From positions 62,001-126,000 of the IMG/VR virus record IMGVR_UViG_3300034104_005687: DNA of 64,000 nucleotides; one strand, 5' to 3'. The notes below the pieces were generated by a model, which worked only from the letters and a program-made list of their open reading frames with translations, searched no databases and was not told the DNA's origin. Every line of letters begins with the position of its first letter. Within the stretch, counting starts at the first letter, position 1. Shown here piece by piece: positions 52,201 through 56,713 of this stretch. A program made the position numbers and the translations under genes.

Positions 52201-53198
52201 GTTTTACCAGCTCGGCAGCCGCCAGCCATGCTGCCAACACTGGTGTTATTTTGATCTCAAATACTTGTACGCCACTGGTAAATCACTGGGGTAGTTCAGT
52301 GATCATGGACGGCAACTTTGATGGTGACGAAGGCTATCAGTTCACATTCAACCGCGTGAACTACGGTTTGCCGGCAACTATTGGACAGAAGCAAGTGGCA
52401 TTTTGTATGCGACTAAGCCCCAGTGTCAGCAATGGCCTGATTGGAGAGCTAGGCGATCGTGACCTAATCAACCGTGCTCAAGTTACCATGAAAAACATGA
52501 TCATAAACATCACAGCCGGTCGTTATTTGGTAGAAGGTATCTTGAACCCCAGCAACATTGATGCTGCCAACACTGCCTGGGCTGGCATCAACAACCTGGG
52601 CGGTGGCTTTCAGCCCAGCCTGTGTGAATTTTCTACTGCTCCTACCTACACCGACGAAAGCACTGGTGGCCTTACAGGATCTCCATTTGGCACAGAAGGT
52701 GGCCTTATTGAATCAGGTACAAAACCAACGTTTTCTACCACTAGAACATTTGCAAACTTGACTCCAGGTGTGATATCCAGTTCAGGATCGGGTGCCAACA
52801 TCACTGTGCAGTTGACACGAACAGGCACAACTTACAACAACAACACTGTGCAAATCACTGTGCAGAATCCCGGCACAGGATATGCTGTTGCGGATACCTT
52901 GAGAATTTTAGGCAACGTCATTGGAGGATCAACACCTGCCAACGATCTAAACCTCACAGTTGCTGCTATTACCAGTGAATTGAACGGTGGCGAACGACTG
53001 TTTGCTATCCCAATCAGTACCACCAACTCGGGCACACTGGATCTGAGTTCAGTGAAACAGGTAGGGACCAGTGCTGTTCCAGGGCAAGGTGTTTACCCCA
53101 ACGGTCCTGAACTGCTGGCAATTCAGCTCACTGCATTGGTAACGGCTACCAATCCTGTGTCTGAAATTCAGTTGCAGTACTTTGAAAGCCAGGCCTAA
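49230..53198 (+). CDS. Large virion structural protein (1322 aa)
   Basis: LIDADFEYGLQ.TKW, RQTKKYFRYQSGKG, YSWYGAG, YMRSGNLP.RYE; beta-rich; in fibre module. Confidence 0.65.
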   Translation: MARQRVNQYVFTPGTSGLGTVKVQGRVNLEEFLAIYNTTDNINIYNFGDPVLGGTVAWAAGTTAQFPTAYDGVTTLTLNADTSLMNAADKLAIWVEAQSMTTKPWSFEMDAIGRSRVANPQALIDADFEYGLQNTKWQNYSVNNNIPGFYENTGSDIVFGTNGYVSLISGDDVITSDVDTSVRLANPGSTQWVANDFALLISQTQGNIVPLTSTFTTARVPSPQERAITVSSSTGFSAGDNVLIIPRPASGGTTIATTISSTATTTVVVTDASTAGIVDGSYIIALTNTANVYEVMAVTNVSTNTLTVVRQSNNTNGAGANINSGNAVYVVPAIEIARVLRVDSGTSIDVARGWYNIPSVNSAEIGSIIQRCSANVELVQHTAISSAVNGQQTISRSAFGSTALTAAGVGSLMVRMTGVYNASTDANVPLTAVNAPDNSFIAGQGEYCTVLSSESTSTDGTNILSALGFNSNNFSYYPHLDPAVALGYPLNRSDTVIRAAFPFTGADLDILSITSNGANPSTITVTTTYAHGLVPGTPILCNLTAGTNYVYGLGSFFIVSVPSNNTFTYTAKTGAAVSGSILGIINVRSNATFLPRPFDGGVVLGPGTPTRGAAAVRQTKKYFRYQSGKGILFTSGTMLKPTFDVIAVSASNTVPNSTITIVTDLPHGLNPGAEIALSGVTTSGYNYPGYVITDILSDLSFTVDAQDTLGSTTPVLGSQPRVNVEAWHGASVRAGIFDDQNGLYWECDGQSINAVQRSSTFQVAGLVSVGVGSNLVVGNETCRFQEQLNNGDVVVIRGMTHTVTSIPSEQRMTVVPVYRGVSNQNRVKMCLRQEIRVRQPDFNIDPLDGTGPSGYTLDSTKMQMLGVEYSWYGAGYVQWMARGQDGVMIPAHRRPNNNINNEAYMRSGNLPARYEAINETPVNRLASAIDSSQSTITLVDATDYPAASVTYPVYVMIDSEIVKYSGKTGNNLTGCTRAATFSQWVEGANRSFTSSAAASHAANTGVILISNTCTPLVNHWGSSVIMDGNFDGDEGYQFTFNRVNYGLPATIGQKQVAFCMRLSPSVSNGLIGELGDRDLINRAQVTMKNMIINITAGRYLVEGILNPSNIDAANTAWAGINNLGGGFQPSLCEFSTAPTYTDESTGGLTGSPFGTEGGLIESGTKPTFSTTRTFANLTPGVISSSGSGANITVQLTRTGTTYNNNTVQITVQNPGTGYAVADTLRILGNVIGGSTPANDLNLTVAAITSELNGGERLFAIPISTTNSGTLDLSSVKQVGTSAVPGQGVYPNGPELLAIQLTALVTATNPVSEIQLQYFESQA

Positions 53199-53638
53199 AC
53201 GGCCAAAGAGGCAAGATAACGCTCCACAGTGTCTATCTTGCCTTGCACAGCTTCAACATTCACAGTGTTCCACAGCCCAGGATGCATGGGCCTTGGCCAG
53301 TGCCCGCGATCAATCCAGGCATAGCCAAGGTGTTCGTGATTCAATGTTGGAGTGAATTCTGTGGCCACACTGCACACCCAGGTATTGTATTCAAATTGAC
53401 TGTCGGCGCTGGTGAATTTTTCCAACGGCACAAGATGTTGATAGTCAGGAAAAAATCCCAGTTCTTCCACACATTCGCGTTCCATACCGCCCAACAACGT
53501 TTCGCTGGGCTCTACCTTGCCACCAGGCAAGCCCCAAGAGCCAGGGTGTTTGGCATCGTTGCGCAACAAATAGAGATAGCGTCCAGTGTCAGCACTGCGA
53601 AACCAAACGCCCACAGCTCTTACAGAACCAGTCTCCAT
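53195..53638 (-). CDS. Nudix hydrolase
   Basis: Nudix box WGLPGGKVEPSETLLGGMERECVEELG; start placed at ATG 53638. Confidence 0.88.
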   Translation of the reverse strand: METGSVRAVGVWFRSADTGRYLYLLRNDAKHPGSWGLPGGKVEPSETLLGGMERECVEELGFFPDYQHLVPLEKFTSADSQFEYNTWVCSVATEFTPTLNHEHLGYAWIDRGHWPRPMHPGLWNTVNVEAVQGKIDTVERYLASLAV

Positions 53639-55020
53639 TTTCCCCCGGGGTACACTCCTTGATAGCTTTTGATCCATTCTTGTCCAGTCCAGTAATATTG
53701 TGTACCTGTAGTTATGTTGGTCACATACTGGCTGGCAGATTGTGATGATGCATTGAACACCACACGCCAAAAACCAGATGCCATGTATTCAACTATGTCG
53801 TTGGCTTCGGCTATCAGTGGTCGCCCATTTTCGCCAACCCAGGCCGAAGCTGGCCCAATATTTTCACCGTTGCCAGTAGGTTCAGTCAACAAATACCTGA
53901 CACCAGCTATGGAAGAGTCTTCGGTTCTGGGCCCAGTGGCCTGCGGATTGATAATGGCATCAATGGGCGGCAATGTGTTTTGTGGCACAGTGTCAACGTC
54001 TATGTCTACCAGCAAGAATCTTTCATCGTTGGGATCTACCACAATAGTGCCCACAACTTCTGATTCATCAGGTTGTTCCAGTCTGATTTGACTGATGCCT
54101 GGACGTAGAGCACCGTACAAGCTGATCACAGCAGGCCACATCAAGTTGCTGTCGGGCACAATCACAGTTTCTTGCAAACTGTCGTTGTCAGGCTCTGCAG
54201 CCAGGTACTGTTGCTGCAAACACTGTAGTTTGTTGCCAATCAGCACAGTGGCATAGTTGTAGGGTGTGATTACCTGACGTGTGCCCAGCAACAAATCGTT
54301 GTTGGTAATGGCGTTGATCAAGTCGCCTTGTGCATCGTACATGCTGGCCACAATTCGTTCAACCACGCCCAGTTTCTTGACCCTGGCAGGTGGACTGATC
54401 CAAATTGGCAAATTGAATCTCAGTGTGGCAATGTCAATGGGATTTTCTGTGCCCACAGGGATAGTTCGACTGCTCCAGTTTACACTTTCTAGTTCAACCA
54501 CACTCAAACTGGTCCAGTCAAGAAAGTTGTCAGTGCTTTGTATTTCCAAACTGGGATTGAACAAGGTCAGTATTTGTTCCACCAACTGTAACTTTTGATT
54601 GGTGTTGCTGGTCCAAACATCCAGGTTCAAGGTCAGCGCATACGGCACAGGCATCAGACGTTCTATGGTAAACGCATTGCCTTGAGTGGTTTCATAAGTT
54701 TCAGTTTCGGTATCGTAGGTACGTTGGCGCACATTGACCTTGCTTACAAAGTAAGGTTCTTGCATTCTGGGACGATCATAGTTCAGTGCCGCAATGTAAA
54801 ATGTCATCAGTGGAGTAGATGGCAAACTGCTGGCTGAGTTTTCTTGCAGTATGGTCTGTGCCTGACGACTAGAATCTCCGTAGCGGATGGGCACACGCAA
54901 CAGTGCGGCAGCATTGGGATCAGCGTCGTCGCGTCCGTATTCAATTTGGAACCCTGAAAAGATTCGTGTAAACTGTAACAGGAATCGACGTATTTGTTCG
55001 TCATAAAAATAACTTTGAAT
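53620..55020 (-). CDS. gp15: Tail terminator/sheath stabiliser, gp15-like, C-terminally extended; probable ATT start
   Basis: In-frame YFYDEQIRRFLLQFTRIFS upstream of the track's start; VPIRYG, MPVPY.L, QLVEQIL.LFNP motifs. Confidence 0.78.
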   Translation of the reverse strand: MQSYFYDEQIRRFLLQFTRIFSGFQIEYGRDDADPNAAALLRVPIRYGDSSRQAQTILQENSASSLPSTPLMTFYIAALNYDRPRMQEPYFVSKVNVRQRTYDTETETYETTQGNAFTIERLMPVPYALTLNLDVWTSNTNQKLQLVEQILTLFNPSLEIQSTDNFLDWTSLSVVELESVNWSSRTIPVGTENPIDIATLRFNLPIWISPPARVKKLGVVERIVASMYDAQGDLINAITNNDLLLGTRQVITPYNYATVLIGNKLQCLQQQYLAAEPDNDSLQETVIVPDSNLMWPAVISLYGALRPGISQIRLEQPDESEVVGTIVVDPNDERFLLVDIDVDTVPQNTLPPIDAIINPQATGPRTEDSSIAGVRYLLTEPTGNGENIGPASAWVGENGRPLIAEANDIVEYMASGFWRVVFNASSQSASQYVTNITTGTQYYWTGQEWIKSYQGVYPGGKWRLVL

Positions 55021-55031
55021 TTTGATTCTCC

Positions 55032-56342
55032 TTAACCGCCGTTGTCGGCGCGAGGTTTAAGAATTTCACTGAGACTCTGACGACTTGGAATAGCGCCTCG
55101 GTCTGTGGTGTTGACTGTGGTGTCGTTGTTGACAAAACTACTACGCAGTGTTTTGTTGTCTGGGCCGTTGTTGAGATCAGTGCGAACCTTGTCTTCAATC
55201 TTGATCCAACGTGCTCCGTCATAACGGAACAGTCTATTGGGCCTGTAATCCAGCCGTAAGCAGTAGTCGCCGGCCACAGGACTGAGTGGAAAACTCACAC
55301 CAGGAGTAACAGGCAATCCATTGGGTGCAATACCATCGCCGGTGAGATAACCCACAGTGTACCCGTCACTTTTGGGAGTAACGTTCATGCCGCCTTGTGT
55401 GCCGTCTACTGTGGTTGTATTATCTGCTGTGAGCCCTTCAGGATTAGCAGGCTGCAGCTCATTGGTAGGCAAAATATAAAACTTTGTGGGATCATAGCCT
55501 GACAACGGAACCTCAACGTCGGCCTGGACCAAGATAGCATCGTTGATTTCGTAGTCTTTCTGTCTGGTGCCTTGTATATCACTGATGGTGTCAGGAGTGT
55601 ACACAGTCCAAAAGTTGGTATTGGTTATGTTTGTGCCAGCAGGTACGTTCTGAGTGGCCTGATAATACACATCGCCATAGTTGACCACAGTGCCAGTGGG
55701 ATAAAAGTTTCCGTTGTCCCAGATGTTTTCTTGCACCATTGGCTTGTCTGTGATTGAATTGTATTCTTGTGCGTCTGTGAGCGGGGTGGCTTTGACACGC
55801 CACAAGTGAGGCAACCATGTTTGACTAAATCCCTCGCTGGCAAAAGCAGCGTCTTGTATCACATAATACTTGGGCAAAGCTCGCGGCAAGTTAGGATTCA
55901 GCGGATGAAAATCTCGCAGGTTGGGCAGTTCCAGCACATCGCCGGTCATGAGTTTTCGGCCAAACGTGTCTATCATGTCGTTGTAGTGAAACGTGATAAA
56001 CAGGGTATCATTGTTCAAAAACAAGCCAAACTGTGTTAGGTCAAAGTCCACATCTTGTTGATTGTATACTCCTCGCATGACATAGATGTCAGGAGCGTAC
56101 ACACGATCCCGGTTTTCCAGCAACAGCAAGTCCTGTATGTTCAGTGGATTCAGTTCGTCGTACACTGGCTGGGTGGCGTCTGCGTTGCCCGAAAATGCCG
56201 AATCCTCACCGCCAGTTTGTGGTCCTAGATATTTGTGAACATACATATCTGCCCCGCCAACAGTGTACATTTCGGAGATAGTGCGATCCAAAAACTGGTA
56301 ATCTCGGGTTCGATTGGGACGGTATAGGCTTAGGCGTGGCAT
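55032..56342 (-). CDS. gp14: Neck/head-closure protein, gp14-like, extended
   Basis: Start MPRLSLY at 56342; DLLLLENRDR, LTQFGLF, GDVLELP; adjacent to gp15. Confidence 0.65.
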   Translation of the reverse strand: MPRLSLYRPNRTRDYQFLDRTISEMYTVGGADMYVHKYLGPQTGGEDSAFSGNADATQPVYDELNPLNIQDLLLLENRDRVYAPDIYVMRGVYNQQDVDFDLTQFGLFLNNDTLFITFHYNDMIDTFGRKLMTGDVLELPNLRDFHPLNPNLPRALPKYYVIQDAAFASEGFSQTWLPHLWRVKATPLTDAQEYNSITDKPMVQENIWDNGNFYPTGTVVNYGDVYYQATQNVPAGTNITNTNFWTVYTPDTISDIQGTRQKDYEINDAILVQADVEVPLSGYDPTKFYILPTNELQPANPEGLTADNTTTVDGTQGGMNVTPKSDGYTVGYLTGDGIAPNGLPVTPGVSFPLSPVAGDYCLRLDYRPNRLFRYDGARWIKIEDKVRTDLNNGPDNKTLRSSFVNNDTTVNTTDRGAIPSRQSLSEILKPRADNGG

Positions 56343-56364: not shown

Positions 56365-56393
56365 TTGACTGGATATTCCCAAACTGCTATAAT
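56365..56393 (+). promoter_or_regulatory. Sigma70 early promoter
   Basis: TTGACT-17 nt-TATAAT with extended TG. Confidence 0.85.
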
Positions 56394-56684: not shown

Positions 56685-56713
56685 TTGACATCAAAATCAA
56701 TCTTTGCTATAAT
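56685..56713 (+). promoter_or_regulatory. Sigma70 early promoter (consensus)
   Basis: TTGACA-17 nt-TATAAT with extended TG. Confidence 0.88.

What the first reader, a model, noticed from the sequence alone, without database searches (positions are those of the whole stretch)
54900..55034. gp15-like gene appears to start at a non-canonical ATT codon
Seen: TAAGGAG (55028-55034, overlapping the gp14 stop) lies 7 nt before ATT CAA AGT TAT TTT TAT GAC GAA (IQSYFYDEQIRRF). There is no in-frame ATG/GTG/TTG between the upstream in-frame stop and 54900. Known: the YFY...RR motif is the N-terminus of gp15 proteins, and AUU starts are rare and IF3-sensitive (infC). Inference: deliberate down-tuning of a low-copy tail terminator.
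Basis: partly seen in the sequence, partly recalled or inferred. Interest (0 to 1): 0.6.

Follow-up and report, generated by a model that had tools for sequence, protein, structure and literature searches.

The report
Real ATT start, left by homing endonuclease
A lake jumbo phage's tail-sheath terminator gene (gp15-like) really does start at the rare codon ATT behind a strong ribosome-binding site, and relatives show that this start cassette comes attached to, or is left behind by, a selfish homing-endonuclease gene inserted at the gene's 5' end.

Summary
On the minus strand, TAAGGAGA (55034-55027) lies 7 nt before ATT (55020-55018). There is no in-frame ATG, GTG or TTG between the upstream stop (55059-55057) and TTG 54900.

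ATT is the real start of a 466-codon gp15-like gene:
- The codon aligns with Met1 of T4 gp15 and with the ATG or GTG of most relatives.
- The 37 codons that a TTG start would remove are under purifying selection.
- Contigs from independent lake metagenomes carry the same letters.
- 45 distinct relatives' loci keep ATT, all with a GGAG-type site 6-7 nt upstream. ATG relatives almost always lack such a site and sit 2-3 nt after the upstream stop.
- Start type and ribosome-binding site switch together in about 20 independent tree contrasts.

New finding: in relatives, a GIY-YIG homing endonuclease gene sits inside the first codons of gp15. To its left is a dead ATG-type remnant. Its own 3' end supplies the binding site, followed by ATT. 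One such allele lies in the window's own clade (88% identity). The window's junction equals that allele with the endonuclease deleted.

"Deliberate down-tuning" is only partly supported. It is the only such start in this genome. Moderate interest.

The parts
55018..55020 (-). ATT initiation codon of the gp15-like gene (expected to be read as fMet)
   Evidence: It aligns with ATG or GTG of orthologues and with Met1 of T4 gp15. It is invariant in 45 distinct ATT contexts. The letters are identical in contigs of 4 metagenome runs.
55027..55034 (-). Shine-Dalgarno site TAAGGAGA; its first three bases are the stop codon of the upstream gene
   Evidence: The GGAG core is followed by a 7-nt A-rich spacer. 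The same spacing occurs in 43 of 45 ATT loci.
53620..55020 (-). gp15-like tail sheath stabiliser / tail terminator gene, 466 codons plus stop; about 200 residues of C-terminal extension relative to T4 gp15
   Evidence: Pfam PF16724, 94.5 bits. phrog_11196, 1e-84. A profile of the family hits T4 gp15 structures 4HUH/3J2M at 7e-10.
54901..55017 (-). Codons 2-40 (QSYFYDEQIRRF...), which a TTG-54900 start would delete
   Evidence: Among 7 ATT lineages, dN is 0.10-0.39 against dS above 1. F5, Y6, D7, Q9 and R11 are invariant across 16 diverse homologues.
54898..54900 (-). TTG, first canonical in-frame codon; rejected as the start
   Evidence: It is not conserved: CGT, ATT or TTA in other ATT lineages. 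It lies 40 codons inside the conserved domain.
55024..55026 (-). ATC, in-frame near-cognate two codons upstream; rejected as the start
   Evidence: It lies only 1 nt after the GGAGA core. The codon at this place varies among ATT loci: TCT, ACC, ACT, GCC, ATT.
55032..56342 (-). Upstream virion structural gene (neck-like by position). The likely ATG is at 56342; the ORF is open from GTG 56399. Its stop overlaps the SD.
   Evidence: phrog_11591, 1.7e-83. Translation. The orthologue is called at 436 aa. There is no Pfam hit, so 'gp14' is not confirmed.
53195..53677 (-). Downstream NUDIX hydrolase gene, overlapping the gp15 3' end by about 58 nt
   Evidence: Pfam NUDIX, 8.5e-14. The same 160-aa overlapping gene occurs in relatives.

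Best explanation
The gp15-like gene is translated from ATT 55020-55018, decoded by initiator tRNA so that the protein begins (f)Met-Gln-Ser-Tyr-Phe-Tyr. The weak codon is made usable by three features: a strong Shine-Dalgarno site (AAGGAGA) at a fixed 7-nt distance, an A-rich spacer, and the upstream virion gene's stop codon inside that site, so terminating ribosomes are handed on.

This 'strong SD + ATT' arrangement is one of two interchangeable start architectures in this phage family. The other is 'no SD, ATG 2-3 nt after the upstream stop'.

Inferred origin: the SD-ATT cassette is the 3' flank of a free-standing GIY-YIG homing endonuclease gene that inserts about 7-10 codons into gp15. The insertion leaves a dead ATG-type 5' remnant on its left and restores the gene's N-terminus on its right. 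In the window's lineage the endonuclease gene, together with the ATG-type remnant to its left, was later deleted, leaving the cassette fused to the upstream gene's stop.

Shown: position of the start, conservation, SD covariation, and the physical link to the endonuclease. Inferred: decoding as fMet, translational coupling, the deletion event, and any effect on protein level.
For: Position of the start:
- No canonical codon is available.
- Orthologues have ATG or GTG at exactly this codon.
- T4 gp15 aligns from Met1: MFG-YFYN against xQS-YFYD.
- The N-terminal 37 codons are under purifying selection in ATT lineages.

Not an error:
- Three IMG/VR contigs from other samples are identical.
- 20 runs from 20 studies hold the stretch.
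- Contigs of 4 runs show no differing letter over 54700-55300.

Compensation by the SD:
- A search that did not require an SD found about 78 gp15 loci with ATT, and none with ATC or ATA. All have a GGAGA, GGGGA or GGGAGA site.
- SD present in 45/45 ATT-start contexts against 4/115 ATG contexts; spacing 7 nt in 43/45.
- On a tree of 165 distinct loci there are 23 state changes. In 20 independent contrasts the SD goes the same way in 19.4 and the other way in 0.1 (p about 4e-6).
- One clade for all ATT loci is rejected (p-AU 3e-54).

Link to the endonuclease:
- A GIY-YIG ORF (PF01541) lies directly upstream in 11/49 ATT loci against 1/117 ATG loci (Fisher 5.8e-6).
- Left junctions carry an ATG-type gp15 5' remnant that ends in a stop.
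- The endonuclease ORF's last codons contain the SD, in different reading frames.
- L298 is 88% identical to the window's gp15, has the same upstream-gene C-terminus, and carries both the endonuclease and ATT. Its right junction matches the window's in 22 of 24 bases.
- L031 equals L147 minus the endonuclease gene.
- The window genome has no GIY-YIG gene.
Against: - There is no RNA, ribosome-profiling or protein data; no RNA run holds the locus. Initiation at ATT and the Met1 residue are therefore inferred.
- 38 of 49 ATT loci carry no endonuclease gene. The cassette could be older than the endonuclease.
- ATT loci of different clades are not more alike in the first 60-240 nt of gp15 than ATT-ATG pairs, so no long co-conversion tract is visible.
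- Similarity among the cassettes may be partly convergent, because SD function constrains them.
- SD + ATG alleles exist next to another form of the endonuclease's right junction (L296, L064). A strong SD with ATG is therefore not forbidden, and why ATT is kept remains open.
Confidence: 0.75

Rival explanations
1. One reading: ATT was selected only to lower, and make IF3-sensitive, the output of a low-copy tail terminator. No mobile element is involved.
For: In an E. coli reporter, AUU gives 6-8 times less product than AUG (PMC3592434). IF3 represses near-cognate starts (PMC7797042). ATT attenuates EbpA (PMC4447247). T4 gp15 is deposited as six chains in 4HUH; that it is a six-copy ring per virion is from general knowledge of T4. 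ATT is invariant in 45 contexts whose spacers have diverged, with no revertant to ATG in that cassette. This argues for selection on the codon.
Against: ATT never occurs without a strong SD that ATG orthologues lack, so a net reduction is not shown. The cassette is physically tied to the endonuclease gene. The phage encodes no IF3.
Confidence: 0.15
2. The ATT, together with the changed third codon and the new upstream sequence, is kept because it makes the junction resistant to cleavage by the GIY-YIG endonuclease. On this view the start codon is an immunity polymorphism, not an expression setting.
For: Homing endonucleases cut endonuclease-free alleles near the insertion site, and carrier alleles must be resistant (PMC2988022, PMC2330249). 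The junction differs from ATG-type alleles exactly around the start. ATT alleles persist without the endonuclease.
Against: There is no cleavage data, and the recognition site is unknown. Other endonuclease-carrying alleles keep ATG (L012, L064, L296).
Confidence: 0.2
3. Sequencing or assembly error: the true codon is ATG.
For: None found.
Against: The letters are identical in three other IMG/VR contigs, one of which carries a synonymous difference nearby. They are also identical in contigs of 4 runs at depth 3.8-51. ATT recurs in 45 diverged contexts.
Confidence: 0.01
4. Translation starts at another codon: TTG 54900, giving a 426-aa product as a gene caller would report, or ATC 55026.
For: TTG is the first canonical codon. 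ATC is an allowed start in table 11.
Against: A TTG start removes 40 conserved, selected residues, and the TTG is not conserved. ATC sits 1 nt after the SD core, and that codon varies among relatives.
Confidence: 0.03
5. gp15 is made as a frameshift fusion with the upstream virion protein, or the gene is a pseudogene that has lost its start.
For: The gp15 frame is open for 12 codons before the ATT and overlaps the end of the upstream gene.
Against: In other ATT loci the upstream stop lies at different distances and in different frames, sometimes 30 nt away or in another gene. No common slippery site exists. The gene is under purifying selection and intact in all relatives.
Confidence: 0.01

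Closest known systems
AUU/AUA initiation of infC (IF3) in E. coli and Flavobacterium, and ATT initiation of Enterococcus ebpA
   Same: A near-cognate AUN start is conserved and preceded by an SD. In infC it lies a few bases after the preceding gene's stop. The annotated canonical start downstream is wrong (PMC7797042, PMC3592434, PMC4447247).
   Different: The product here is a virion protein, not IF3, so there is no autoregulatory loop. The ATT state alternates many times with ATG within one gene family, always together with gain or loss of the SD. It is linked to a mobile endonuclease gene.
T4 gp15 tail sheath stabiliser / tail terminator (PF16724; PDB 4HUD, 4HUH, 3J2M)
   Same: The N-terminal domain is homologous from residue 1, with the same offset of the YFY..RR motif. 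The gene sits in the structural module.
   Different: T4 gp15 has 272 residues and an ATG start. This protein has 466 residues with an extra C-terminal half, shared with PA5oct, Atu_ph07 and SCTP-2.
Free-standing GIY-YIG homing endonucleases of T4-like phages (Seg proteins)
   Same: A small GIY-YIG ORF with a weak NUMOD3 and SegE-like signal lies between conserved structural genes. It is present or absent among close relatives, and the junction sequences are rewritten (PMC2988022, PMC10448857).
   Different: The insertion is inside the first codons of an essential gene, with a 20-30 nt duplication of its 5' end. The element's 3' end supplies a new ribosome-binding site and a non-canonical start. 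Endonuclease activity has not been tested.
Termination-reinitiation coupling of adjacent cistrons (for example M13 gene V-VII)
   Same: ATG-type relatives have no SD and start 2-3 nt after the upstream stop. The window's SD overlaps the upstream stop (PMC2268962, PMC3592434).
   Different: Coupling is inferred here from geometry only.

Membership tests
T4 gp15 tail sheath stabiliser (PF16724) | Sequence match above the curated cut-off | tested here: met
   94.5 bits against a cut-off of 25, residues 4-233. A family profile hits T4 gp15 structures at 7e-10.
T4 gp15 tail sheath stabiliser (PF16724) | N-terminus: Met + 2 residues + YFY..(F/I)RR(Y/F) | tested here: met
   The alignment runs from profile position 1 to T4 residue 1. 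The same offset is seen in 83+ relatives that begin MQQ.
T4 gp15 tail sheath stabiliser (PF16724) | Hexameric ring closing the sheath and binding the neck | not testable with these tools
   No structure prediction or complex job was run. 4HUH is deposited with 6 chains.
Near-cognate (AUU) initiation codon | No canonical start between the upstream stop and the conserved N-terminus | tested here: met
Near-cognate (AUU) initiation codon | The codon aligns with orthologues' canonical start and is conserved across diverged lineages | tested here: met
   45 distinct contexts, never ATC or ATA.
Near-cognate (AUU) initiation codon | Functional ribosome-binding site at working distance | tested here: met
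   GGAG core 7 nt upstream in 43/45 loci and 6 nt in 2/45. It covaries with ATT on the tree.
Near-cognate (AUU) initiation codon | Protein N-terminus or ribosome initiation peak at the codon; repression by IF3 | not testable with these tools
   No RNA run holds the locus. The host is not in culture.
infC-type autoregulation | The gene product is itself the factor that discriminates against the codon | tested here: not met
   The product is a virion protein. No IF3_C domain is found in the genome.
Free-standing GIY-YIG homing endonuclease locus | GIY-YIG ORF at the site | tested here: not met
   Absent from the window and from the whole genome. Present at the same site in relatives L298, L296, L018, L015 and others. 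The window carries only the presumed footprint.
Free-standing GIY-YIG homing endonuclease locus | Presence/absence polymorphism among close relatives, with altered flanks | tested here: met
   Within 88-95% identical gp15 genes: L298 (endonuclease, ATT), L296 (endonuclease, ATG), L297 (none, ATG), window (none, ATT).
Free-standing GIY-YIG homing endonuclease locus | Co-conversion of flanking sequence | tested here: inconclusive
   No excess similarity among ATT loci in the first 240 nt of gp15.
Free-standing GIY-YIG homing endonuclease locus | Site-specific cleavage of the endonuclease-free allele | not testable with these tools
   Needs an enzyme assay.

The most novel reading that the evidence does not exclude
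A selfish GIY-YIG homing endonuclease repeatedly rewrites the translation start of an essential tail gene. It replaces a coupled ATG with its own SD + ATT cassette. The ATT and the neighbouring changes persist because they protect the junction from re-cleavage. The start codon of a structural gene would then be set by conflict with a mobile element rather than by expression needs.
Probability: 0.2. Interest if true: 0.75.

Novelty: new variant of a known kind. Interest (0 to 1): 0.55.

Why it matters
1. Annotation. Public gene calls for ATT-type loci are wrong in both directions. Some are truncated (424- or 453-aa products) and some are over-extended (479-480 aa). The family is very large: more than 7,900 proteins at E below 1e-30.

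2. A natural, replicated experiment on translation initiation. There are about 20 independent switches in which start-codon strength and SD strength change together. This is direct comparative evidence for compensation between the two.

3. A concrete route by which a near-cognate start can arise in an essential gene. A homing endonuclease inserts into the gene's first codons and rebuilds the N-terminus from its own 3' flank. The footprint remains after the element is lost.

Tried and rejected
- Sequencing error: rejected.
- TTG 54900 or ATC 55026 as the start: rejected.
- Frameshift fusion: rejected, because stop offsets and frames vary.
- Genome-wide use of ATT starts: two scans found only this gene. 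A second candidate at genome position 136002 lies inside another frame's ORF.
- Host without SD recognition (Bacteroidota-like), which would make this SD special: rejected. 28% of 228 confident starts have AGGA, and G is enriched at -11 to -7.
- Phage IF3: none found.
- A regulatory RNA fold around the start: not significant, z -1.7.
- A long co-conversion tract shared by ATT alleles: not seen.
- Near-identical DNA in cultured phages: none. The closest are Phosso and Atu_ph07 (about 36% identity), PA5oct (34%) and SCTP-2 (29%), all with ATG.
- A direct phmmer search of solved structures found nothing; the alignment profile was needed.
- The upstream gene could not be confirmed as gp14.
- Expression evidence: no RNA run holds the stretch.
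- The large representative protein search, structure prediction and complex prediction were not used, because they were not needed.
Full report
**What is there**

The finding lies on the minus strand of a 349,369-bp, single-contig jumbo-phage genome (45.7% G+C). It comes from lake-water metagenomes, and the window is C1:62001-126000. Reading the minus strand:
- The upstream 455-codon ORF ends with TAA at 55034-55032.
- That TAA is the first part of TAAGGAGA (55034-55027).
- Seven A-rich bases follow, then ATT (55020-55018), then an open frame of 466 codons down to the stop at 53622-53620.
- The nearest upstream in-frame stop is at 55059-55057.
- Between that stop and TTG 54900 there is no ATG, GTG or TTG.

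**What the gene is**

The product matches Pfam T4-gp15_tss from residue 4 (94.5 bits, cut-off 25). It also matches two PHROG tail families. A profile of 16 homologues hits the solved T4 gp15 structures (4HUH, 3J2M; 7e-10). That alignment runs from profile position 1 to T4 residue 1: T4 begins Met-Phe-Gly-Tyr-Phe-Tyr, and this protein begins x-Gln-Ser-Tyr-Phe-Tyr. Cultured relatives all have ATG one to six codons before the YFYD motif; these are Atu_ph07 and Phosso (about 36% identity), PA5oct (34%) and SCTP-2 (29%). The upstream gene is a virion structural protein by PHROG, but I could not confirm it as gp14. Its likely ATG is at 56342.

**Is ATT the start?**

IMG/VR holds about 498 stretches that encode relatives. 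I compared the best 80.
- At the exact aligned codon, most have ATG, two have GTG and 13 have ATT.
- Three ATT contigs from other samples are identical to the window. One of them carries a nearby synonymous change.
- Twenty runs from twenty studies hold the stretch.
- Contigs of four of those runs show no differing letter over 54700-55300.

This excludes an error.

Among seven ATT lineages, the 37 codons between YFYD and the TTG position have dN of 0.10-0.39 against saturated dS. The TTG itself is replaced by CGT, ATT or TTA. The region is therefore translated, and TTG is not the start. ATC 55026 is only 1 nt after the SD core, and its codon varies among relatives.

Two genome-wide scans found no other gene with this problem. 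The genome makes moderate use of SD sites. The phage encodes no IF3.

**Compensation by the ribosome-binding site**

I searched IMG/VR with a pattern that fixed only the coding motif and allowed ATA, ATC or ATT, with no SD required.
- It returned 92 stretches. About 78 are gp15 starts, and all of those are ATT.
- All have GGAGA, GGGGA or GGGAGA upstream. The remaining stretches are chance matches inside other genes.
- An SD was present in 45 of 45 ATT-start contexts and 4 of 115 ATG contexts. A 46th ATT locus, L173, lacks an SD. I set it aside because its frame is open 51 codons upstream with canonical starts, so its ATT is probably an internal codon.
- The spacer is 7 nt in 43 of the 45, and the codon before ATT is AAA in 34.
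- ATG loci instead sit 2-3 nt after the upstream stop. That is the geometry of termination-reinitiation (PMC3592434, PMC2268962).

On trees built from the gene body without the start region, ATT loci do not form one clade (p-AU 3e-54). At least 23 state changes are needed. In 20 independent contrasts the SD changes the same way in 19.4 and the opposite way in 0.1 (p about 4e-6).

In E. coli reporters, AUU gives 6-8 times less product than AUG in an ordinary SD context (PMC3592434), and IF3 represses such starts (PMC7797042). The family thus shows two alternative designs: a weak codon with a strong SD, or a strong codon with no SD. Whether their outputs differ is unknown.

**Origin of the cassette**

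In several ATT lineages the gene immediately upstream is not the virion gene. It is a 172-183-aa ORF beginning MHIYKITN..GKVYIGQT. This is a GIY-YIG nuclease (PF01541, 6e-9), with weak SegE and NUMOD3 signals.
- Such an ORF lies upstream of 11 of 49 distinct ATT loci, 1 of 117 ordinary ATG loci, and 2 of 8 loci with an extra residue after ATG.
- The left junction of these insertions holds a recognisable ATG-type gp15 5' end: ATG CAA CAA TTT TTC TAC, then a few diverged codons ending in a stop. The endonuclease ATG follows a few bases later.
- The right junction is the last codons of the endonuclease ORF. They contain the SD in different reading frames (..K-E-N..Q-G-E..K-E-I). Then come its stop, one or two bases, and ATT CAA AGY.

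So the element sits 7-10 codons inside gp15. The gene's 5' end is duplicated: the left copy is dead, and the right copy works from ATT.

L031 is L147 without the endonuclease gene, between imperfect direct repeats.

Most tellingly, L298 has a gp15 that is 88% identical to the window's and the same upstream-gene C-terminus. It carries both the endonuclease and ATT. Its right junction matches the window's in 22 of 24 bases. Joining the end of L298's upstream gene (..GGTTAA) to the GGAGAAT of its right junction reproduces the window junction, apart from one A-to-C change in the old endonuclease stop.

The window genome has no GIY-YIG gene. Within 88-95% identical gp15 genes, all four combinations occur: L298 (endonuclease, ATT), L296 (endonuclease, ATG), L297 (none, ATG) and the window (none, ATT). 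This fits the known behaviour of free-standing homing endonucleases in T4-like phages (PMC2988022, PMC2330249, PMC10448857).

**Limits**

- Nothing here measures translation.
- Most ATT loci lack the endonuclease gene.
- ATT alleles share no long similar tract in gp15.
- Sampling was pattern-based.
- Why ATT, and not ATG, is retained behind a strong SD is open. The candidates are expression setting, resistance to the endonuclease, or both. No ATG revertant was seen in that cassette, although the spacers have diverged, which argues that the codon is under selection.

**Verdict**

The ATT start is real, and it is the only one in this genome. As a near-cognate start it belongs to a known kind. 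Two things are new: its repeated, SD-compensated alternation with ATG, and its link to a homing endonuclease footprint.

Noticed in passing
genome C1:347029-347104 (outside the window): A phage-encoded initiator-like tRNA-Met(CAT). It has the C1xA72 mismatch but only two of the three conserved G-C pairs in the anticodon stem (A29:U41, G30:C40, G31:C39). It could alter start-codon proofreading; I did not test any link to the ATT start.
   Followed up: partly
genome C1:200774-200929 (outside the window), locus L085: The phage encodes ribosomal protein bS21 (PF01165, 59 bits, 77-codon open frame).
   Followed up: no
genome C1:332941-349337 (outside the window): A cluster of 24 tRNA genes, plus a permuted tmRNA-like gene (341148-341593, tag ANDSQFALAA). 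There is also an odd 92-nt tRNA-Ile(TAT) with a long extra arm.
   Followed up: no
L298:857-1375; L296:950-1501; L018:2478-2996; L015:2466-2996: GIY-YIG homing endonuclease genes are inserted 7-10 codons into gp15 in relatives. Upstream of each lies a 9-10-codon leftover mini-ORF (such as MQQYFYDLP) and an ATAAATA-like motif just before the endonuclease start.
   Followed up: yes
window 56365-56393 and 56685-56713, + strand: Two near-perfect sigma-70-type promoters (11/12 and 12/12, both with TG extension) lie in the divergent region upstream of the virion gene. A 14-bp-stem hairpin lies at 56709-56676 on the minus strand.
   Followed up: no
window 53620-54240, minus strand (gp15 residues about 260-466): gp15 carries a C-terminal half of about 200 residues that T4 gp15 lacks. 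It has many invariant Trp, Gly and Pro residues and is shared with PA5oct, Atu_ph07, Phosso and SCTP-2. Its function is unknown.
   Followed up: no
window 53620-53677, minus strand: The downstream NUDIX gene overlaps the end of gp15 by about 58 nt. The same overlap is kept in relatives.
   Followed up: partly
proteins P0022, P0023, P0026, P0027, P0029, P0086, P0093, P0114: Public gene calls for ATT-type gp15 loci are truncated (424 or 453 aa) or over-extended from an in-frame GTG inside the endonuclease gene (479-480 aa).
   Followed up: yes
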